Shown one piece after another: positions 33,750 through 49,520 of a stretch of 64,000 bases of DNA. Where the stretch lies: assembly GCF_003918875.1 (NCBI RefSeq), contig NW_025767603.1, forward strand, positions 186,001 to 250,000. Direction: 5' to 3'. This DNA is from Haliotis rubra. Taxonomy: Eukaryota. The notes under the pieces are model-generated. The model made no database searches. It had not been told where the DNA came from and saw only the letters and a program-made list of their open reading frames with translations. Every line of letters starts with the position of its first letter. The first letter of the stretch is position 1. The position numbers and the translations under genes are program-made.

Positions 33750-33880
33750 GGGGTTGATGGGGTAGCCTAGTGGTTAAAGTGTTCGCTTGTCACACCGAAG
33801 GCCCAGGTTCGATTCCCCACATGGGTTCAATGTGTGAAGCCCATTTCTGGTGTCCCCGTCTGTGATGTTGCTAGAATATA
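33750..33880 (+). mobile_element. tRNA-derived SINE, family B, 3'-truncated
   Basis: Homologous to 29635-29800. Abuts the start of the 43-bp array. Confidence 0.85.
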
Positions 33881-33884
33881 GCAT

Positions 33885-36800
33885 GATATCACTGGGCTGT
33901 ATATCCTGATCTGCTCTGTTTCAGCCTAAGATAACAGTACTGTATTCCCTGGTTTGCTGTATCTTGGCATGATATCACTAGGCTGTATTCCCTGGTTTGT
34001 TGTGTTTCAGCATGAGATAACAGCACTGTATTCCCTGGTTTGTTGTGTTTCAGCCTGAGATAACAGTACTGTATTACCTGGTTTGCTGTATCTCGGCATG
34101 ATATCACTAGGCTGTATTCCCTGGTTTGTTGTGTTTCAGCGTGAGATAACAGTACTTTATTCCCTGGTTTGCTGTATCTCGGCATGATATCACTAGGCTG
34201 TATTCCCTGGTTTGTTGTGTTTCAGCCTGAGATAACAGTACTGTATTCCCTGGTTTGTTGTGTTTCAGCGTGAGATAACAGTACTGTATTCCCTGGTTTG
34301 CTGTATCTTGGCATGATATTACTAGGCTGTATTCCCTGGTTTGTTGTGTTTCAGCATGAGATAACAGTACTGTATACCCTGGTTTGCTATATCTCGGCAT
34401 GATATTACTAGGCTGTATTCCCTGGTTTGTTGTGTTTCAGCGTGAGATAACAGTACTGTATTCCCTGGTTTGCTGTATCTTGGCATGATATCACTAGGCT
34501 GTATTCCCTGGTTTGTTGTGTTTCAGCATGAGATAACAGTACTGTATGCCCTGGTTTGCTGTATCTTGGCATGATATCACTAGGCTGTATTCCCTGGTTT
34601 GTTGTGTTTCAGCGTGAGATAACAGTACTGTATTCCCTGGTTTGCTGTATCTTGGCATGATATCACTAGGCTGTATTCCTGGTTTGTTGTGTTTCAGCGT
34701 GAGATAACAGTACTGTATGCCCTGGTTTGCTGTATCTTGGCATGATATCACTAGGCTGTATTCCCTGGTTTGTTGTGTTTCAGCGTGAGATAACAGTACT
34801 GTATTCCCTGGTTTGCTGTATCTTGGCATGATATCACTAGGCTGTATTCCCTGGTTTGTTGTGTTTCAGCGTGAGATAACAGTACTGTATTCCCTGGTTT
34901 GCTGTATCTTGGCATGATATCACTAGGCTGTATTCCCTTGGTTTGTTGTGTTTCAGCGTGAGATAACAGTACTGTATTCCCTGGTTTGCTGTATCTCGGC
35001 ATGATATCACTAGGCTGTATTCCCTGGTTTGTTGTGTTTCAGCATGAGATAACAGTACTGTATTCCCTGGTTTGCTGTATCTTGGCATGATATTACTAGG
35101 CTGTATTCCCTGGTTTGTTGTGTTTCAGCGTGAGATAACAGTACTGTATTCCCTGGTTTGCTATATCTCGGCATGATATTACTAGGCTGTATTCCCTGGT
35201 TTGTTGTGTTTCAGCGTGAGATAACAGTACTGTATGCCCTGGTTTGCTGTATCTTGGCATGATATCACTAGGCTGTATTCCCTGGTTTGTTGTGTTTCAG
35301 CATGAGATAACAGTACTGTATGCCCTGGTTTGCTGTATCTTGGCATGATATCACTAGGCTGTATTCCCTGGTTTGTTGTGTTTCAGCGTGAGATAACAGT
35401 ACTGTATGCCCTGGTTTGCTGTATCTTGGCATGATATCACTAGGCTGTATTCCCTGGTTTGTTGTGTTTCAGCGTGAGATAACAGTACTGTATGCCCTGG
35501 TTTGCTGTATCTTGGCATGATATCACTAGGCTGTATTCCCTGGTTTGTTGTGTTTCAGCGTGAGATAACAGTACTGTATTCCCTGGTTTGCTGTATCTTG
35601 GCATGATATCACTAGGCTGTATTCCCTGGTTTGTTGTGTTTCAGCGTGAGATAACAGTACTGTATTCCCTGGTTTGCTGTATCTTGGCATGATATTACTA
35701 GGCTGTATTCCCTGGTTTGTTGTGTTTCAGCGTGAGATAACAGTACTGTATTCCCTGGTTTGTTGGGTTTCAGCCTGAGATAACAGTACTGTATTCCCTG
35801 GTTTGCTGTATCTTGGCATGATATTACTAGGCTGTATTCCCTGGTTTGTTGTGTTTCAGCATGAGATAACAGTACTGTATACCCTGGTTTGCTATATCTC
35901 GGCATGATATTACTAGGCTGTATTCCCTGGTTTGTTGTGTTTCAGCGTGAGATAACAGTACTGTATGCCCTGGTTTGCTGTATCTTGGCATGATATCACT
36001 AGGCTGTATTCCCTGGTTTGTTGTGTTTCAGCGTGAGATAACAGTACTGTATTCCCTGGTTTGCTGTATCTTGGCATGATATTACTAGGCTGTATTCCCT
36101 GGTTTGTTGTGTTTCAGCGTGAGATAACAGTACTGTATGCCCTGGTTTGCTGTATCTTGGCATGATATCACTAGGCTGTATTCCCTGGTTTGTTGTGTTT
36201 CAGCATGAGATAACAGTACTGTATGCCCTGGTTTGCTGTATCTTGGCATGATATCACTAGGCTGTATTCCCTGGTTTGTTGTGTTTCAGCGTGAGATAAC
36301 AGTACTGTATTCCCTGGTTTGCTGTATCTTGGCATGATATTACTAGGCTGTATTCCCTGGTTTGTTGTGTTTCAGCGTGAGATAACAGTACTGTATGCCC
36401 TGGTTTGCTGTATCTTGGCATGATATCACTAGGCTGTATTCCCTGGTTTGTTGTGTTTCAGCATGAGATAACAGTACTGTATGCCCTGGTTTGCTGTATC
36501 TTGGCATGATATCACTAGGCTGTATTCCCTGGTTTGTTGTGTTTCAGCGTGAGATAACAGTACTGTATGCCCTGGTTTGCTGTATCTTGGCATGATATCA
36601 CTAGGCTGTATTCCCTGGTTTGTTGTGTTTCAGCGTGAGATAACAGTATTGTATTCCCTGGTTTGCTGTATCTTGGCATGATATTACTAGGCTGTATCCC
36701 TGGTTTGTTGTGTTTCAGCGTGAGATAACAGTACTGTATTCCCTGGTTTGCTGTATCTTGGCATGATATTACTAGGCTGTATTCCCTGGTTTGTTGTGTT

Positions 36801-38531
36801 TCAGCGTGAGATAACAGTACTGTATTCCCTGGTTTGCTGTATCTTGGCATGATATTACTAGGCTGTATTCCCTGGTTTGTTGTGTTTCAGCATGAGATAA
36901 CAGTACTGTATTCCCTGGTTTGTTGTGTTTCAGCGTGAGATAACAGTACTGTATTCCCTGGTTTGCTGTATCTCGGCATGATATCACTAGGCTGTATTCC
37001 CTGGTTTGTTGTGTTTCAGCGTGAGATAACAGTACTGTATTCCCTGGTTTGTTGTGTTTCAGCATGAGATAACAGTACTGTATTCCCTGGTTTGCTGTAT
37101 CTTGGCATGATATCACTAGGCTGTATTCCCTGGTTTGTTGTGTTTCAGCGTGAGATAACAGTACTGTATTCCCTGGTTTGCTGTATCTTGGCATGATATC
37201 ACTATGCTGTATTCCCTGGTTTGTTGTGTTTCAGCCTGAGATAACAGTACTGTATTCCCTGGTTTGCTGTATCTCGACATGTTATTACTAGGCTGTATCC
37301 CTGGTTTGTTGTGTTTCAGCGTGAGATAACAGTACTGTATTCCCTGGTTTGTTGTGTTTCAGCGTGAGATAACAGTACTGTATTCCCTGGTTTGCTGTAT
37401 CTTGGCATGATATTACTAGGCTGTATTCCCTGGTTTGTTGTGTTTCAGCATGAGATAACAGTACTGTATGCCCTGGTGTGTTGTGTTTCAGCATGAGATA
37501 ACAGTACTGTATGCCCTGGTTTGTTGTGTTTCAGCATGAGATAACAGTACTGTATTCCCTGGTTTGCTGTATCTCGGCATTATATCACTAGGCTGTATTC
37601 CCAGGTTTGTTGTGTTTCAGCGTGAGATAACAGTACTGTATTCCCTGGTTTGTTGTGTTTCAGCATGAGATAACAGTACTGTATTCCCTGGTTTGCTGTA
37701 TCTTGGCATGATATTACTAGGCTGTATTCCCTGGTTTGTTGTGTTTCAGCATGAGATAACAGTACTGTATTCCCTGGTTTGTTGTGTTTCAGCGTGAGAT
37801 AACAGTACTGTATTCCCTGGTTTGCTGTATCTCGGCATGATATTACTAGGCTGTATTCCCTGGTTTGTTGTGTTTCAGCATGAGATAACAGTACTGTATG
37901 CCCTGGTTTGTTGTGTTTCAGCATGAGATAACAGTACTGTTTTCCCTGGTTTGCTGTATCTCGGCATGATATTACTAGGCTGTATTCCCTGGTTTCTTGT
38001 GTTTCAGCATGAGATAACAGTACTGTATTCCCTGGTTTGTTGTGTTTCAGCGTGAGATAACAGTACTGTATTCCCTGGTTTGCTGTATCTCGGCATGATA
38101 TTACTAGGCTGTATTCCCTGGTTTGTTGTGTTTCAGCGTGAGATAACAGTACTGTATGCCCTGGTTTGCTGTATCTTGGCATGATATCACTAGGCTGTAT
38201 TCCCTGGTTTGTTGTGTTTCAGCGTGAGATAACAGTACTGTATTCCCTGGTTTGCTGTATCTATGCATGATATCACTAGGCTGTATTCCCTGGTTTGTTG
38301 TGTTTCAGCGTGAGATAACAGTACTGTATTCCCTGGTTTGCTGTATCTCTGCATGATATTACTAGGCTGTATTCCCTGGTTTGTTGTGTTTCAGCATGAG
38401 ATAACAGTACTTTATTCCCTGGTTTGTTGTGTTTCAGCATGAGATAACGGTACTGTATTCCTTGGTTTGTTGTGTTTCAGCGTGAGATAACAGTACTTTA
38501 TTCCCTTGTTTGTTGTGTTTCAGCGTGAGAT
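33885..38531 (+). repeat. 43-bp A/B minisatellite (86-bp higher-order unit) containing the splice acceptor of exon 38524
   Basis: A = ctgtattccctggtttgttgtgtttcagcgtgagataacagta; B = ctgtattccctggtttgctgtatcttggcatgatatcactagg. About 108 units by length. Confidence 0.97.
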
Positions 38532-38626
38532 TGCCTCACTGAGACCTTATGCTATGGACAACCAGCAACTGTTGGAGAAACAGCTTGAAGCTGACAAGGA
38601 GATTCGCAACCTCAAGGATGAAAACA
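38524..38626 (+). CDS. CARD-CC protein, coiled-coil exon
   Basis: tgtgtttcag|CGT ... AAC A|gtgagt, phase 0 to 1. REIASLRPYAMDNQQLLEKQLEADKEIRNLKDEN; LKDEN resembles the K(D/E)(D/E)N motif of CARD9/11 coiled coils. Not in the ORF track. Confidence 0.82.
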
Positions 38627-38813
38627 GTGAGTAGGGTACTAAAATTGTGTAAAAACTTGAGTGGAAATCACATGTCTCTCTGTTAAACTAAAGCTGTGAG
38701 TCATAAGAAAAGGAATGGAAGAAAATAACTTAATCTTTTGTTTCCTTTGTCTCTGGTTGCACTGATAGATAGCCTGAGTTTCCTGGTGCTGAGAGTCTGA
38801 ACTTGCATTGCAG

Positions 38814-38972
38814 GAGAATTCATGAGGAAGAACATCCAGTATCGAGATGATGTGGAGCGCCAGATGAGCCGCATTGACGAGCTGCTCGTAGACAGAGAGG
38901 ACCTGGAGAACAACCTGAAAGAGAGAAACAATGAGCTGGAGAGAATGAACCAATCACAGGATGTGCTGATAG
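38814..38972 (+). CDS. CARD-CC protein, coiled-coil exon
   Basis: cattgcag|GA ... ATA G|gtatgt, phase 1-1. REFMRKNIQYRDDVERQMSRIDELLVDREDLENNLKERNNELERMNQSQDVLI. Confidence 0.85.
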
Positions 38973-39510
38973 GTATGTTTACTTGGTACAGAGAGAATGA
39001 ACCAATCACAGGATGTGCTGATAGGTTTGTTTACTTGGTACAGAGAGAATGAACCAATCACAGGATGTGCTGATAGGTATGTTTACTTGGTACAGAGAGA
39101 ATGAACCAATCACAGGATGTGCTGATAGGTATGTTTACTTGGTACAGAGAGAATGAACCAATCACAGGATGTGCTGATAGGTATGTTTACTTGGTACAGA
39201 GAGAATGAACCAATCACAGGATGTGCTGATAGGTATGTTTACTTGGTACAGAGAGAATGAACCAATCACAGGATGTGCTGATAGGTATGTTTACTTGGTA
39301 CAGAGAGAATGAACCAATCACAGGATGTGCTGATAGGTATGTTTACTTGGTACAGAGAGAATGAACCAATCACAGGATGTGCTGATAGGTATGTTTACTT
39401 GGTACAGAGAGAATGAACCAATCACAGGATGTGCTGATAGGTATGTTTACTTGGTACAGAGAGAATGAATCAATGAGTATTACTTGGTACAGAGAGAATG
39501 AACCAATCAC
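38939..39510 (+). repeat. 52-bp tandem repeat (~10.5 copies) containing the exon end and splice donor of exon 38814-38972
   Basis: (gagagaatgaaccaatcacaggatgtgctgataggtatgtttacttggtaca)n. Confidence 0.97.
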
Positions 39511-39653
39511 TGTCCCACTAAAGAATATTGTACACAAATGGAGTGCAGCATGCATAGCCTTTACCTAGAAGAGCTCACTGAGTAAGTCTTCCTCTTAACC
39601 TCAGTAGTGCTTAACCAAAGTCAGTTTCTAACTTTGTTTGTTACTTGTTACAG

Positions 39654-39733
39654 AGAGGTTTGAAGAGGAGAGAAAGAAATCCCAGCGACTTATCAACATA
39701 GCAACCCGTAGAGAAAGACACACTGATGACAAT
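39654..39733 (+). CDS. CARD-CC protein exon
   Basis: ttgttacag|AG ... AAT|gtaggc, phase 1 to 0. ERFEEERKKSQRLINIATRRERHTDDN. Confidence 0.8.
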
Positions 39734-39797
39734 GTAGGCATTTCTACTTTGTGTACAGGCAATATGGATCAATGTTATTTGTGTTGCAGCATCGGTT

Positions 39798-40394
39798 ATT
39801 CTTTTTCAGAAGAAGTCCTCCTTGGGGTACTTATAAGCATTAAAATGTCCATTTTAAAAACCTACGACAGTTGTAACTATATTTCAATAAAAATATTTAC
39901 AAAACGAAAAAACACGTTCTGCATTATGAGACCACCCCTACAGAGCCCCCGCGGGGCCCCCTACCGGCAAGAGCAGGTAACTCTCGCACCTCACTTTTCA
40001 TGCTGTCGTCTTACAAGAGAGACGTGCGTGTCGTTCATTGATGAAAATGAGTGCTAAAGAATCAATTAATGTATGTATGGTTCCTCTTTTCTCTCTCAGA
40101 CGGGCGCTAGATGGAATTGTAGGTTGATTTTTTCATTCATGATTGTTGTAACTTAGTCGGACAGGCTCCATTTTCCAGCCAGGTGGCAGGCAAGATGGCG
40201 GTCGGTTTAACTTCCTTCTGTCCTACGGTTGTAACTTTTTTGAGTTACATCGCTAGGGTGGTAGGGTATTTCAGCGATGTGTGGTGAGTTGGGTAAGTTT
40301 TTTCATATGTTTTTTACGCTGTATATGTTACGCAGGAAGCTTGCATTTTCGCCTCTTGTTCATGATACATGTTAAAGGGTTAAAACTGCCTTAG
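39798..40394 (+). repeat. DIRS left inverted terminal repeat
   Basis: Reverse complement of 45391-45982 with few differences (aagtcctccttggggtac...aaaactgccttag). Confidence 0.95.
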
Positions 40395-40506
40395 CTTTTC
40401 ACATAGGGTTTATCGCCCGTGCTTATTATGTTTTACTTGTGTTGCATATATGTGTGTATTTTAGACTGTACATCAGTTTCCATTAAAATGGTTCTGTTTG
40501 TTACAG

Positions 40507-42325
40507 TTTCACCCGTGCGTTGCATGTGCGGCCATGTTGCCACCACAGGATACTCACGATGTGTGCCTCCGTTATTTGGCCGTTGATCACCCTGATGATC
40601 TAACTTGTGAGAGTTGCCAGGTTTTCTCACCCAAGACGACTAAGCGTCGGTCCGCCGATTTTTTGTTTTATACAAATTTGCTGCAGGCGGGGGGGACTTA
40701 TGGGCTCAGGACCCACCATCTAAAGCGGCTAAAAGTAAGAAGAGTTTTTTCTACTAGCAGGGGTGGGGGTAAGCGGGCCAAGACGGCGGATAAACCTTCT
40801 TCCCCTATCCCCTCCACTTCCACTCAATCAGATTCTGCACCCTTCCGTATTACTGATTTAACTTCTATTTTGCAGCAACAGATGACTTCGGTTCGCTCGC
40901 TGATCTCGGACGCGATGTCCGGTCTCCGTGAGGAGATCAGCTTCCGTTCGGGAGTTAGCGGCGCTCCGGGGTCGTCTGTCGGGGGTTCCCCTGCCTCGGG
41001 CTTCGGTCCGGGGACGGGTTCTACCCGGCTCTGGTGACCCCTCTGCTGGTGTGCCTGTGTCTGGCCCGAGCTTCGGCTCCAGTTCAGCGCAGCGTACTTA
41101 GCGCGGTGGATACGGGTCTCGTACCGTTGGCCACCAGCTCACAAGCAGGGTTTTCCGAGCGCCGGTGCTACCGGTCGACTCGGGGCCTTACGTTACTTCG
41201 GGGAATCCTGTTTCGGCAGGCTCTTCCCTGCGTCCTCGGCGACCTGGCTCATCCTCGAGCCTAGGGTCGGTCGGGCCAGGCGTCTCGGCTCTTATGGCTC
41301 CCCTATCTTTGTCCGTGGAGCCGACTTCCGTGCTTTCGGAGGTGACTCTGGATACCGAGAGTTCGCTTCCGGGGGAGCGGGAGGAGGAAGCCATGGATGA
41401 GGACGGGGGGCAATTTTGCCGCAGGTGGTCGTGCCGTCAGATGACCCCGACCCCGTGGAGTTTCGTCTCCCTGGGGAGGCGTTTGCTCCATGTCGGGTCG
41501 CCGAGGCCCACTTGCGTATTTTACCTTCACTGATTAGTGAGGTTATTAACCCTCTCCTCTCAGGTGGCAGGTCACGCTTCGATCTCCCGGAGCTGAACCG
41601 GCGCTACCTGATGGGAGAGGGGGCTCTTTATGACCCCCCGGTGGTAGATGAGTGCATTTATGCCTCAGTCGCCCTGGGGGGGTCATCTGGCCATAGCCAC
41701 ACGCCGGCTCGTCAGGGTCGGCGCTCGCCTCCGTTTACTTCCAACAACCAGGTGTTGAAATCGGTATATCGTTCCTTTGAAGAACAATACCGTAACGCAG
41801 TACAACAACTTAAGGTTTCCGTCCACTCAGCATACCTCTCGGCCCTGCAGAGGAAGCTGGTGGACCAGGAGGGCGTGGACGACGCTCACGGAGGTGCATT
41901 CACATCTGGCACGCTGATGCCATTCGGTCGTGCGCTAGCCAGATGATGTCTGCAGTTATGGGCCTCTGTCGGTTGTGGCTGTCTGTGGCCAGATATTCAC
42001 CGGCTACACAGCAGGCGCTGCTGTCTCTGCCATTCAGGATGGGCTCAACCCTGTCCCGGGGGCATTGACAGTGGTCAGGGAGGCCGCGGAGGCGGTTAGC
42101 CAGTTTAAGGACTCAAAGCCCTTACTCGAGCAACCCCTCACTTCTCGCGCCCGGCCTTCTGTCCTTGCCTCAGCTTACCCTTCCTCTTCAGGAAAGGAAG
42201 CGCCGAAGTGGACGGCTCCACTTCAGGCACGTAGAGGCAAGGGCAGGGGTAGAGGTAGGGGCAAGGCTGCCGCCTCTCAGCAGCATTTTCAGAGGAAGGG
42301 GAAGTCGGCCCTGGCTTCCCAGTAA
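40507..42325 (+). pseudogene. DIRS ORF1 (gag-like), frameshifted
   Basis: N-terminal CxxC..DTHDVC..H..CESC zinc finger, Ser/Pro-rich middle and C-terminal RGKGRGRGRG. Split over several frames. Confidence 0.75.
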
Positions 42326-42342
42326 GCATTCCTCCGGAGCCC

Positions 42343-43407
42343 TTGTCGGTCCCGGCACAAGCAGTTGTTACACTGCCCACTGCCGGGATTCACTGCCTCT
42401 TACCCGACGTCCCTGTCGGCGGCCGGCTACCTCTCTTCCTTCGGGAATGGGAGAAAGTCACTTCAAATCCCTGGGTCCTGTCCACACTCAGGGATGGTCA
42501 TATGCCACAGTGGAAGCGAGGCCCTCCTCCTTTCTCCGGGATTCGTTGCACGCCAGTGCCGAACTCTCCGGAGAAGGCAGATATTCTCCGTGCCGAGGTC
42601 CAGTCGTTGCTGGACAAGGCAGCCATCGAGGTGGTTCCGACGGGCCAGGAAAATCAAGGGGTTTACTCAACCTATTTCCTGGTTACCAAGAAGGATGGAG
42701 GGTTCAGACCCATTCTCAATTTAAAGGGTCTGAACCGTTTGCTAGAGGTACCGTCCTTCAAGATGGAGACACTGCGGTCGGTGATCTCATTTGTGGAGGC
42801 AGGGGATTGGCTTACGTCAATCGACCTCAAGGACGCGTACCTTCATGTACCAATGCACCCCGAGTTCAGGAAATACCTTCGGTTTTCCTTCGACGGGAGG
42901 TGCTATCAGTTTCGTGTGCTCCCCTTCGGCATCTCCACGGCGCCAAGGGTGTTCACAAAACTAATGTTAGTGCCAGCTCAAGTCGCCAGGGCACAGGGCA
43001 ACTTTTGTTACCCGTACCTGGACGACTGGCTTCTCAGGGCGCTTTCCACTCACTTGAGTCGAGACTCCACACAGACAGTGATTGATATTCTCACCAGGTT
43101 GGGTTGGGTCATCAATCTCAAGAAATCCGAGCTGGTTCCATCCCAGGATCGGGTTTTCTTGGGGGCGAGATTCGAGACACAGCAGGGCTTAGTCTCTCTG
43201 TCTCAAGACCGCATTTCCAAAGTCCAAAGGGGTGTTTTACAATTCCTTCAGTCCCCCAGGGCCTCAGCTCGCACATGGCTTCAGTTGCTAGGCAACATGG
43301 CGGCGACTGGGCGTGGTTTGGCGTCTTGGCGTCTGAGGATGCGGCCAGTTCAGCAAGCGTTAGCACAGCTGTGGTCACACTCGGGAGTTACGAGACAATT
43401 CTCCTAA
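42343..43407 (+). CDS. DIRS reverse transcriptase domain (ORF2, 5' part)
   Basis: VGGRL..F..EW, YSTYFLVTKKDGGFRPILNLK, FKMET, SIDLKDAYLHVP, YQFRVLPFGISTAPRVFTK, YLDDWL, INLKKS. Confidence 0.93.
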   Translation: MSVPAQAVVTLPTAGIHCLLPDVPVGGRLPLFLREWEKVTSNPWVLSTLRDGHMPQWKRGPPPFSGIRCTPVPNSPEKADILRAEVQSLLDKAAIEVVPTGQENQGVYSTYFLVTKKDGGFRPILNLKGLNRLLEVPSFKMETLRSVISFVEAGDWLTSIDLKDAYLHVPMHPEFRKYLRFSFDGRCYQFRVLPFGISTAPRVFTKLMLVPAQVARAQGNFCYPYLDDWLLRALSTHLSRDSTQTVIDILTRLGWVINLKKSELVPSQDRVFLGARFETQQGLVSLSQDRISKVQRGVLQFLQSPRASARTWLQLLGNMAATGRGLASWRLRMRPVQQALAQLWSHSGVTRQFS

Positions 43408-44275
43408 CTCCAGAGTGGCTTCTCCCTCACCTGAGGTGGTGGACCGACCGGGAATCTAGCCAGGGTATCCCACTGGAGACCCCCGGTGCCTACGCCACAA
43501 TTCAGACGGACGCCTCTCTCACAGGGTGGGGTGGGGGTCCTAGGGGACCTCACAGCTTCCGGACTTTGGTCCGTGAGCTGACCATGCACATCAATGTGTT
43601 AGAATTGAGAGCGGTCCGGACGGGTATTCAACGCCATGGAGCAGGTTGGGAACCGTGTGGTTCATCTAGAAATGGACAATCAAACGGCGATGTCCTATAT
43701 CCTGTACGGTGTCTCCGTCACTCCTCCAGGAGGCGTGGCAGTTTCTGCTGTGGTGCGACAGGTTCAGCACACAGGTATTCTGTGTATCTCCGGGGGAGGA
43801 CAACCGCGTGCAGATGCACTCTCACGGTATCCTGGCCCCTCACGAAGTGGTTACTTTCGACCGGGAGATATTTGGGGTTATCTCCCAGTTGTTCGGGTCG
43901 TTCCAGGTGGATCTGTTTGCCTCTGGGGTGACGAACCAGACTCCGGTGTTTTGCTCCAGGATCCCGGATCCGGGAGCGATCGCCTCCGATGCCTTCCAGC
44001 TAGATTGGACGGACAGGGTTCTGTGGGCTTTCCCACCGATACCTCTGATTCCCAGAGTCCTATCACAGCTTCGCCACCCAACCAGCGCGACTACTTGTGC
44101 TTCTTGCACCTCTGTGGTCGTCTCAACGCTGGTTCCCTGTATACTCAGATCGCTCGTACAGCCTCCTGTGCTATTACCGATGCGACCGGACCTTCTATCC
44201 CAGGAAGGCCAGCCACACCCGGATCCATGGATCCAGTGGGTGGCTTGGCCACTGTCAGGAGTCGCCTCCATGCGA
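43408..44275 (+). pseudogene. DIRS RNase H and DNA N6-adenine methyltransferase-like domains, frameshifted
   Basis: IQTDASLTGWG, HINVLELRAV and MDNQTAMSYI (RNase H); VDLFAS..NQTPVFCSR, DAFQLDW and WAFPPIPLIPRVL (DIRS MT domain). Spread over three frames. Confidence 0.85.
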
Positions 44276-45290
44276 GCGGAATTCCTGCACCAGTTGCAGA
44301 CACAATTCTGGCTTCGCGGAGGGATTCGACTAACTTACAGTATGAGGATAGATGGGCCTGTTATGCGCGCTGGTGTGGAAACAGAGGGATACTTGATCCC
44401 TTTTCTTCGACTGTAGTCGAAGTTTTGGAGTTTTTACAGTCTCGGTTAGGAGCCGGCCTAGCCGCGTCTACTATCCGAGGCTACTCCACAGCTATTTCAG
44501 CTTTCCACATTCCTACCGAGGGTGCCCTTTTAGGACAACACCCTCTGGTTCAGCGTTTCTTAGCAGGTGTGGACAGAGTGCTTCCGGTCGTCCGACGGAC
44601 AAGTCCGCCATGGGATCTGTCCATCGTTTTAGATTGGCTATCTAGTCCTTTTTTCTACGATATGTCGGGGTTGTCGCTTCAACTGTTAAGTTCAGGTAGA
44701 GCGGGTTGGGGACATTCATGCTATGTCCTCAGACCCGGAGCTTACCGTTTTTCACAAGGATAGGGTAAGTATTCGTTTACCTGATTCCTACCGCCCAAAA
44801 ATCGATAAAGCGTTTCATGTCACCGCTCCTATTGATTTGCCTGCCTTTACGCTTCCTGCTTCGTCTGGTAGGCGCGAAGCGCAGAGTACATGTGTTGGAT
44901 GTCCGTAAGACACTCAAGACGTATGTCAAGAGAACAATGTCAATCCGTAAAGAGAAGCAGTTATTCTGCTGTTACGGGGGTGGTAAAGTAGGTCACCCAG
45001 TTACCACACAGACCATATCGAGGTGGATTGTGTCGGCGATTTGTATGGGTTACATACACAAGGGTATGACTCCCCCAGAGGGTTTAAAGGCTCATTCGGT
45101 TCGAGCAGTTGCCACGTCTAAAGCGTATGCTGCTGCTCTGCCCATTGAGGAGATCTGCTCTGCGGCTATTTGGAGCCGACCAAGTACGTTCATTCGCCAT
45201 TATCAGCTGGACAAACATTCGCGTGAGCGTGCTCGGTTTGGCCAGACGATTCTCCACAGTGGACAGAGTAACACGCCTCAGGCCGAGTGA
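44250..45290 (+). pseudogene. DIRS tyrosine recombinase (ORF3), frameshifted
   Basis: SRRDSTNLQYEDRW, GLAASTIRGYSTAISAFH, PPWDLSIVL, KAHSVRAVATS and WSRPSTFIRHY (catalytic HxxR...Y). Confidence 0.9.
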
Positions 45291-45390
45291 GCCTTGTCGC
45301 TGATTTACTCGGTGTTTTATACTGGTGTCGGGTCTATTCTCCCCTATTTTGCACTGGTGAAGGTATGTGGTGGCGGTTTTTATTTCCGTT

Positions 45391-45982
45391 CTAAGGCAGT
45401 TTTAACCCTTTAACATGTATCATGAACAAGAGGCGAAAATGCAAGCTTCCTGCGTAACATATACAGCGTAAAAAACATATGAAAAAACTTACCCAACTCA
45501 CCACACATCGCTGAAATACCCTACCACCCTAGCGATGTAACTCAAAAAAGTTACAACCGTAGGACAGAAGGAAGTTAAACCGACCGCCATCTTGCCTGCC
45601 ACCTGGCTGGAAAATGGAGCCTGTCCGACTAAGTTACAACAATCATGAATGAAAAAATCAACCTACAATTCCATCTAGCGCCCGTGCGAGAGAAAAGAGG
45701 AACCATACATACATTAATTGATTCTTTAGCACTCATTTTCATCAATGAACGACACGCACGTCTCTCTTGTAAGACGACAGCATGAAAAGTGAGGTGCGAG
45801 AGTTACCTGCTCTTGCCGGTAGGGGGCCCCCCGGGGGCTCTGTAGGGGTGGTCTCATAATGCAGAACGTGTTTTTTCGTTTTGTAAATATTTTTATTGAA
45901 ATATAGTTACAACTGTCGTAGGTTTTTAAAATGGACATTTTAATGCTTATAAGTACCCCAAGGAGGACTTTCTTCAAAGAAT
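45391..45982 (-). repeat. DIRS right inverted terminal repeat
   Basis: ctaaggcagttttaa...gtaccccaaggaggactt. The ORF track shows the same peptide on opposite strands in both ITRs. Confidence 0.95.
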
Positions 45983-49132: not shown

Positions 49133-49258
49133 CTGCGGTGTGAGAAGCTGAAGCTGCAGCGAGAGAGTGACCAGAGCCAGCTGTTCCTGAAGCATGCAGA
49201 GAGGCGGAACGAGCAGTACTTCAAGACCATCCAGCAGCTGGAGAAAGAGAAGAGGAAG
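49133..49258 (+). CDS. CARD-CC protein, coiled-coil exon
   Basis: ctcttgttgtag|CTG ... AAG|gtaggc, phase 0-0. LRCEKLKLQRESDQSQLFLKHAERRNEQYFKTIQQLEKEKRK. Confidence 0.85.
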
Positions 49259-49276: not shown

Positions 49277-49520
49277 AATATAGCCAGTGACTTGTGGATC
49301 GGTTGGCCACAATGTCTGCTGAGTCTGAATAGTTCTTGTTTACTGTATGAATATAGTCAGTGATTTGTGGATCGGTTGGCCACAGTGCCTACTGAGTCGG
49401 AATAGCTCTTGTTTACTGTATGAATATAGTCAGTGATTTGTGGATTGGTTGGCCACAATGCCTGTTGAGTCGGAATAGTTCTTGTATACTGTATAAATAT
49501 AGCCAGTGATTTATGGACTG
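49277..49520. repeat. ~74-bp repeat, ~3 copies
   Basis: aatatagycagtgatttgtggatcggttggccacaatg...gaatagttcttgtttactgtat. Confidence 0.85.

What the first reader, a model, noticed from the sequence alone, without database searches (positions are those of the whole stretch)
38939..39660. Tandem repeat of an exon/intron boundary forms an array of in-frame 33-nt candidate cassette exons in a CARD-CC coiled coil
Seen in sequence: the 52-bp unit is the last 33 nt of exon 38814-38972 plus 19 nt, gtatgtttacttggtacag. That 19-mer starts with the real donor and ends in ttacttggtacag|agag, one base different from the real downstream acceptor ttacttgttacag|agag (39641-39657). Each unit therefore reads cag|33 nt|gtatgt, phase 1-1 and stop-free, encoding ERMNQSQDVLI. 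A 19-nt intron is too short for a typical animal spliceosome, but skipping one unit gives a 71-nt intron (38973-39043). It has a ctgat branch-like motif ~22 nt upstream of the AG. The only variant donor among the full copies (copy 2, gtttgt) both weakens the nearest decoy donor and lengthens that intron's pyrimidine tract. Inference: this is exon/intron birth by tandem duplication caught in progress, and possibly a splicing- or VNTR-tuned 11-residue (hendecad, coiled-coil-compatible) insert in an immune adaptor. Direct use of any later donor as an exon extension gives a frameshift or stop.
Basis: partly seen in the sequence, partly recalled or inferred. Interest (0 to 1): 0.8.

Follow-up and report, generated by a model that had tools for sequence, protein, structure and literature searches.

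The report
Splice-junction minisatellite in abalone CARD gene
An intron of a blacklip abalone immune-adaptor gene opens with ten near-perfect tandem copies of its own exon end plus splice signals, but this is an old, already known and apparently tolerated kind of repeat, and the RNA on hand skips every copy.

Summary
The array has ten full 52-bp units (38940-39459) with one difference in 520 nt, then a degenerate 33-nt unit and an 18-nt partial unit. Unit 1 is the last 33 nt of exon 38814-38972 plus the real donor.

The genome is Haliotis rubra and the gene is a CARD10/11-like CARD-coiled-coil protein (XP_046553753.1).

The reading "exon birth caught in progress / cassette exons" is not supported:
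- Spliced contigs from two runs of a sister organism carrying the same unit join 38972>39654 only.
- All six annotated isoforms in three Haliotis species have one ERMNQSQDVLI.
- The array sits at the same place in H. rufescens (~20 units) and H. asinina (~8 units), so it is genus-old.
- In those two species the interior units have lost donors, acceptors or reading frame, with no third-codon-position bias.

H. rubra carries a recently homogenised version. The unit tail derives from the real acceptor, so each unit is an exon tail plus a collapsed intron.

This is a "mirage" minisatellite, known from amphioxus, and matches the human F7 IVS7 VNTR. This scan has already found the same kind on other DNA of this genome (a Drosha intron and a cell-surface gene).

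Minor isoforms cannot be excluded, because assembled contigs drop rare variants. Interest is low to moderate.

The parts
38524..38626 (+). Exon 5 of the CARD-CC gene (coiled coil, REIASL...KDEN). Its first 8 nt are also the end of the upstream 86-bp satellite.
   Evidence: Spliced contigs join 38626>38814 with GT..AG ends; tblastn of P0001; sequence.
38814..38972 (+). Exon 6 (159 nt). Its last 33 nt (38940-38972) are the exon part of array unit 1 and encode ERMNQSQDVLI.
38973..38978 (+). Authentic donor GTATGT, the most upstream of 10 donor copies and the one used in RNA.
   Evidence: Joint 38970>39652, read with the cut +2 as 38972>39654, GT..AG, in X11 and X12.
38940..39459 (+). Ten full 52-bp units (33 nt exon tail + 6 nt donor + 13 nt acceptor-like tail), 99.6% mean pairwise identity.
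39025..39030 (+). Variant donor GTTTGT of copy 2 (A>T at 39027), the only difference among the full units.
39460..39510 (+). Degenerate 33-nt unit (39460-39492, internal deletion) and an 18-nt partial unit (39493-39510). This is the older, diverged 3' edge of the array and is shared with organisms B and C.
   Evidence: contigs 6-10 and 15.
39511..39653 (+). Unique 3' part of the intron, with CTAAC at 39628-39632 (branch-like A 22 nt before the AG), a 75% pyrimidine tract, and the real acceptor ending at 39653.
   Evidence: Branch point use is inferred, not shown.
39654..39733 (+). Exon 7 (80 nt, ERFEEERKK...TDDN), followed by donor GTAGGC.
33880..38531 (+). Context: a 4.6-kb 86-bp satellite in the preceding intron whose units carry copies of the acceptor plus the first 8 nt of exon 5. 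It is a second junction-anchored array in the same gene.
   Evidence: the RNA contigs enter exon 5 at 38524.

Best explanation
This is a junction-anchored ("mirage"-type) intronic minisatellite in the Haliotis rubra CARD10/11-like gene.

Origin (inferred). In an ancestor of living abalone, a duplication joined the acceptor end of this intron to a point 33 nt before the end of exon 6, using the shared AGAG. This produced a 52-bp unit made of exon tail, donor and a collapsed 19-nt intron. The unit then amplified and has turned over ever since by unequal exchange or slippage. H. rufescens and H. asinina keep diverged, decaying units. The H. rubra lineage has a freshly homogenised set identical to the exon-proximal unit.

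Splicing. It goes from the first donor (38973) to the distal real acceptor (39653), and the whole array is removed as intron (shown for a sister organism with the same units).

Why the decoys stay silent (inferred from established splicing knowledge):
- The exon is defined by its acceptor and the first donor downstream, the 5'-to-3' choice shown experimentally for the human F7 IVS7 VNTR.
- The 19-nt donor-acceptor spacing is too short to splice.
- 33-nt units are too short for exon definition.
- The decoy acceptors have a poorer pyrimidine tract (60% against 75%) and CTGAT rather than CTAAC.
- Any later donor used as an exon extension gives a premature stop, and such RNA would probably be degraded.

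The array most likely has no protein-coding role.
For: - Array anatomy.
- Unit unique to this locus in the genome.
- Acceptor-derived tail: 12 matches against 0.03 expected, found only in the array and at the real acceptor.
- Spliced contigs X11 and X12 (1.58 kb, depths 15.8 and 7.6) show only 38626>38814 and 38972>39654. DNA contigs of the same organism (X3) hold the identical unit at depth 234-369 against 48-57 in the flanks.
- All six annotated isoforms in three species have one ERMNQSQDVLI. The P0001 and P0003 clusters have a single member each, so no +11-aa isoform is hidden in them.
- Orthologous arrays: L008 39599-40650, about 20 units at 81% matches; L009 52415-52800, about 8 units at 78%.
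- Their interior units have lost donors (ATGAGT, TCGAGT, ACGTGT) or carry GC in place of GT (GCGAGT, GCAAGT), have lost acceptors (GGGG, ACAA), and two carry stops.
- Variants fall on codon positions 8:6:3 and 7:7:7.
- Within-array identity is 99.6% in H. rubra, 84% in H. rufescens and 76% in H. asinina.
- Known analogues splice normally: PMC1557585, PMC3087553 and PMC3902484.
Against: - The RNA evidence is two assembled contigs from one study of a sister organism, not H. rubra itself. Contigs drop rare variants, so minor or condition-specific isoforms are not excluded.
- The perfect preservation of all ten donor/acceptor/frame sets in H. rubra is what a used cassette array would also look like, although recent homogenisation explains it equally well.
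- The exon-like 33 nt of interior units diverge somewhat less than the 19-nt part in the other species (0.145 against 0.219; 0.158 against 0.305). The sample is tiny and the units are not independent.
- The origin scenario and the reasons for decoy silence are inferred, not tested.
Confidence: 0.8

Rival explanations
1. The units are used, at low level or under particular conditions, as 33-nt cassette exons (for example 38972>39044 and 39076>39654). This would add one or more 11-residue blocks to the coiled coil of the CARD-CC adaptor, with copy number setting the range.
For: Every H. rubra unit keeps GT, AG, a CTGAT 22 nt before the AG, and an open phase 1-1 frame. The mirage-to-exon model has been proposed in print (PMC3087553).
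Against: No such joint appears in X11 or X12. No annotated isoform has the insert in three species. Interior units in H. rufescens and H. asinina lose splice sites and show no coding constraint. From general knowledge, 33-nt exons are below the usual size for exon definition.
Confidence: 0.08
2. The array is non-coding but acts in cis on splicing efficiency or mRNA level. Decoy donors and acceptors would soak up splicing factors or divert some transcripts to decay, so copy number would tune expression of the adaptor.
For: The array has stayed at the same place in three species while its units turned over. Use of a later donor gives a premature stop. Genome-wide links between tandem repeats and splicing are reported in humans (PMC10078293, abstract only).
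Against: There are no expression or genotype data here. The window is about a quarter tandem repeats, so persistence of one more array needs no function. Mirages in amphioxus do not disturb splicing.
Confidence: 0.1
3. The array is an assembly artefact or a fragment of a dispersed repeat or transposon.
For: The copies are near-identical, copy number is hard to assemble, and the locus is repeat-rich.
Against: Independent DNA runs of organisms B and C hold the array-specific junction words at raised depth. Arrays occur at the same place in two other assemblies. The unit is found only at this locus in the genome.
Confidence: 0.01

Closest known systems
"Mirage" minisatellites of amphioxus (Adh3, globins BflGb6/BflGb9, troponin C, PGBD5): tandem duplications of exon-intron boundaries (PMC3087553, PMC3902484)
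   Same: A minisatellite-size unit whose terminal copy spans an authentic exon/intron boundary. The units repeat splice signals and regular splicing is not disturbed. Units evolve in concert, with diverged edge units.
   Different: This one is in a mollusc, in a different gene. The unit carries both a donor and an acceptor-derived tail, so each unit mimics a complete in-frame 33-nt exon. The array is shown here to be held at one place across three abalone species.
Human F7 intron 7 37-bp VNTR, whose first element spans the exon 7/IVS7 boundary (Borensztajn et al. 2006, PMC1557585)
   Same: The authentic donor is followed by identical pseudo-donors that stay silent, and the most upstream one is used.
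   Different: The F7 mechanism was tested with 50 minigene constructs; nothing of that kind has been tested here. The abalone units also contain acceptor copies, and the unit is 52 bp rather than 37 bp.
Intron gain by tandem genomic duplication (for example potato RdRp, PMC4974935, title and abstract only)
   Same: A tandem duplication supplies duplicated splice signals inside a gene.
   Different: In that case a new intron is spliced between the duplicated sites. Here no new intron or exon is seen in RNA, and the whole array lies inside the pre-existing intron.
Other junction-anchored arrays in this same genome noted earlier by this scan (s1-352095, Drosha intron; s1-349449, cell-surface gene; s1-339927, the 86-bp satellite just upstream)
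   Same: Same genome and same architecture: an exon edge plus splice site amplified in tandem. Normal splicing was reported for the first two.
   Different: Those are other loci. I did not re-test the notes beyond reading the papers they named and looking at the upstream satellite.

Membership tests
Mirage / junction-anchored minisatellite | Tandem array with a minisatellite-size unit (about 10-160 bp) | tested here: met
   52-bp period, 10.3 copies, 99% matches.
Mirage / junction-anchored minisatellite | A terminal unit spans an authentic exon/intron boundary, so the units repeat the splice signal | tested here: met
   Unit 1 is 38940-38991. The donor at 38973 is used in spliced contigs, and all 10 units carry a donor copy.
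Mirage / junction-anchored minisatellite | Regular splicing is not disturbed | tested here: met
   Only 38972>39654 appears in X11 and X12, and the annotated proteins carry a single copy. This holds at contig depth only.
Mirage / junction-anchored minisatellite | Length instability and concerted evolution | tested here: inconclusive
   Between species there are 10, about 20 and about 8 units, and within-array identity is 99.6%, 84% and 76%. Polymorphism within H. rubra was not tested. The depth ratios are only rough.
F7 IVS7-type donor VNTR | Identical pseudo-donors downstream stay silent and the most upstream donor is selected | tested here: met
   In H. rufescens and H. asinina only unit 1 encodes ERMNQSQDVLI, and that is the sequence in the annotated protein.
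F7 IVS7-type donor VNTR | Pseudo-sites become functional when the first donor is destroyed (scanning) | not testable with these tools
   Needs minigene mutagenesis.
Alternative cassette micro-exon | Inclusion seen in mRNA | tested here: not met
   No extra joint in the two RNA contigs and no +11-aa isoform. Rare isoforms are not excluded.
Alternative cassette micro-exon | Splice sites and reading frame conserved in orthologous units | tested here: not met
   Donors and acceptors are lost, two units carry stops, and there is no third-position bias.
CARD-CC protein family (CARD9/10/11/14-like) | N-terminal CARD domain closest to CARD9/CARD11 | tested here: met
   Pfam CARD at 1.2e-13, residues 31-115. 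The best solved-structure hits are CARD11 (1e-9) and CARD9.
CARD-CC protein family (CARD9/10/11/14-like) | Long coiled coil after the CARD; binds Bcl10 | not tested
   Residues of about 130-440 are rich in E, K, R, Q and L by eye. No coiled-coil predictor or binding test was run. NCBI names it CARD10-like / CARD11-like.

The most novel reading that the evidence does not exclude
In the H. rubra lineage the freshly homogenised array of ten perfect exon-tail/donor/acceptor units may be spliced at low level, or on immune challenge, into +33n isoforms. These would add 11-residue blocks to the CARD-CC coiled coil. Copy-number variation among animals would then tune assembly of the adaptor's signalling complex. 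That would be a mirage minisatellite actually turning into exons.
Probability: 0.06. Interest if true: 0.7.

Novelty: new member of a known kind. Interest (0 to 1): 0.27.

Why it matters
It adds a mollusc example to a little-known class of repeats that copy splice junctions, and it comes with a three-species comparison. That comparison shows such an array can stay at one intron start through speciation while its units decay or are re-homogenised.

It is also a natural test bed for splice-site choice: ten identical donors and eleven near-identical acceptors, with only the outermost pair used. It does not show exon birth, and it does not change what is known about CARD-CC proteins.

Tried and rejected
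- Dispersed repeat or transposon origin: rejected. The unit matches only this locus in the genome.
- Assembly artefact: rejected for presence. The exact copy number of ten was not verified.
- Coding constraint on interior units: looked for and not found.
- Pfam on single exon translations: only a half CARD domain at 17.7 kb and coiled-coil noise.
- Exon peptide against 1.84 billion representative proteins: only the species' own protein and one 53-aa genomic fragment of an unnamed, more distant assembly.
- Search for transcript-derived protein fragments of 166-527 aa that might show an insert (P0001:130-430): nothing found. Given the length filter, this says little.
- Rfam on 38400-39900: no RNA family.
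- A bacterial-type promoter/terminator scan: irrelevant for an animal gene, and it found nothing.
I used the database's own protein P0001 instead.

Full report
**What is there**

TRF finds a 52-bp period, 10.3 copies and 99% matches at 38939-39474. In register there are ten full units at 38940-39459 with one difference in 520 nt (A>T at 39027, giving GTTTGT in copy 2). A 33-nt unit with an internal deletion follows (39460-39492), then an 18-nt partial unit (39493-39510). Each unit is 33 nt identical to the end of exon 38814-38972, then GTATGT, then a 13-nt tail ending in CAG. In phase 1-1 the 33 nt read ERMNQSQDVLI. Reading through the first donor runs into a stop near 39050.

**Not chance, not a dispersed repeat, not an artefact**

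The 17-mer at the real acceptor (39641-39657) recurs in the window only in the array, with 1 mismatch: 12 matches against 0.03 expected. The unit matches no other place in the 1.38-Gb genome. DNA contigs of two other labelled organisms hold array-specific words. In X3 these are at depth 234-369 against 48-57 in the flanks. In X8 they are at 110-129 against 30-52, and include a 68-nt contig identical to 38939-39006 that crosses a unit-to-unit junction. The tool warns that depth is not a copy number, so I take these figures only as showing more than one copy.

**The gene**

The exon peptide hits a 949-aa protein at 100% identity. This is XP_046553753.1, named caspase recruitment domain-containing protein 10-like isoform X1 of Haliotis rubra. 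It has an N-terminal CARD (Pfam 1.2e-13) that is closest to the solved CARD11 and CARD9 CARDs, followed by a long charged helical region. tblastn places 14 exons in the window. Exons 5, 6 and 7 are 38524-38626, 38814-38972 and 39654-39733.

**RNA**

Two 1.58-kb contigs (X11 and X12, organism B) skip 38627-38813 and 38973-39653, both with GT..AG ends. They continue into the exons at about 33.09 kb and 48.02 kb, so they derive from spliced RNA. Organism B differs from the window by about 2-3.5% in the flanks, but its DNA holds the same unit sequence, with no differences over 39419-39482. Its spliceosome therefore faces the same perfect decoys and uses the first donor and the distal acceptor. Contigs show the major form only.

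**Annotated proteins**

Six isoforms from H. rubra, H. rufescens and H. asinina all read ...ERMNQSQDVLI-E(R/K)FEEERKK... once. The H. rubra clusters have one member each.

**Age**

Two orthologous loci were fetched: L008 (H. rufescens) and L009 (H. asinina). Both have an array at the same place:
- L008 39599-40650: about 20 units, 81% matches.
- L009 52415-52800: about 8 units, 78% matches.

In both species only unit 1 encodes ERMNQSQDVLI. Interior units have lost the donor GT (ATGAGT, TCGAGT, ACGTGT) or carry GC there (GCGAGT, GCAAGT), have lost the acceptor AG (GGGG, ACAA), vary in length (46-60 nt), or carry stops. Distinct variants in the exon-like part fall 8:6:3 and 7:7:7 on codon positions 1, 2 and 3, so there is no sign of purifying selection on a peptide.

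Mean identity within arrays is 99.6% in H. rubra, 84% in H. rufescens and 76% in H. asinina. Between species it is 75-85%. The array is therefore old, and the H. rubra lineage holds a recently homogenised or re-expanded version. From my own background knowledge, these three species span deep branches of the genus.

A 306-bp contig of a more distant, unnamed assembly (L007, 69% identical peptide) shows no copy of the exon tail in the first 93 nt of its intron. This is weak evidence that the array is absent outside Haliotis.

**Origin (inference)**

The unit tail is homologous to the real acceptor, and both are followed by AGAG. The first event must therefore have joined the acceptor end of the intron to position 38940. 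Two routes are possible: a duplication spanning the exon tail and the whole intron, followed by an internal deletion that left a 19-nt remnant, or a two-point template switch. The diverged units at the 3' edge fit the usual exclusion of array edges from homogenisation, as described for amphioxus mirages.

**How it works (inference from established splicing knowledge)**

- The exon is defined by its acceptor and the first downstream donor. [quoted passage not shown]
- A 19-nt spacing cannot be spliced.
- 33-nt units are short for exon definition.
- The decoy acceptors have a 60% pyrimidine tract and CTGAT, against 75% and CTAAC at the real site.
- Later donors used as exon extensions give a premature stop.

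**Comparison with what is known**

Tandem duplications of exon-intron boundaries were named "mirages" in amphioxus (Adh3, globins, troponin C, PGBD5). They do not disturb splicing, and they were already proposed as a route to new exons and introns (PMC3087553, PMC3902484). Earlier notes of this scan report the same architecture elsewhere in this genome. The intron just upstream holds a 4.6-kb satellite that runs 8 nt into exon 5. This array is therefore a new member of a known kind. What this work adds is the three-species history and the collapsed-intron structure of the unit.

**Limits**

- There is no RNA from H. rubra itself, and no deep or long-read RNA.
- Copy number in the assembly was not verified, and polymorphism was not tested.
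- The reasons given for decoy silence were not tested.

Noticed in passing
window 33880-38531: A 4.6-kb satellite (86-bp unit, 54 copies) fills the intron before exon 5 and ends 8 nt inside the exon, so its units copy the acceptor plus the exon start. The RNA contigs of organism B enter the exon at 38524. H. asinina has 2.8 copies of a homologous 102-bp unit just before its exon (L009 32660-32943). H. rufescens shows a different 49-bp array there (L008 37898-38845).
   Followed up: partly
window 39813-45970: A retroelement sits in intron 7, about 80 nt after exon 7. It has 99% complementary inverted terminal repeats (39813-40394 and 45391-45970) and a reverse transcriptase ORF (Pfam RVT_1, 8e-21, at 42343-43404), an architecture like DIRS elements. 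DNA contigs of organisms B and C leave the window sequence at about 39787-39798 and continue with sequence like that of H. asinina, so the insertion looks specific to the H. rubra assembly or lineage.
   Followed up: partly
L007 1-60: In a 306-bp contig of a more distant, unnamed assembly (GCA_900175075.1), the acceptor plus the first 17 nt or so of the orthologous exon 6 is duplicated in tandem (two 30-nt copies). This is another junction duplication at the same exon, in another species.
   Followed up: no
window 49277-49517: A 73-bp x 3.3 array starts 19 nt after the donor of exon 9 (which ends at 49258), close to but not across the junction. About a quarter of the whole window is tandem arrays (49 TRF rows).
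   Followed up: no
L009 33133-52181: The intron between exons 5 and 6 is about 19 kb in H. asinina, against 187 nt in H. rubra and roughly 330 nt in H. rufescens. A large insertion is likely.
   Followed up: no
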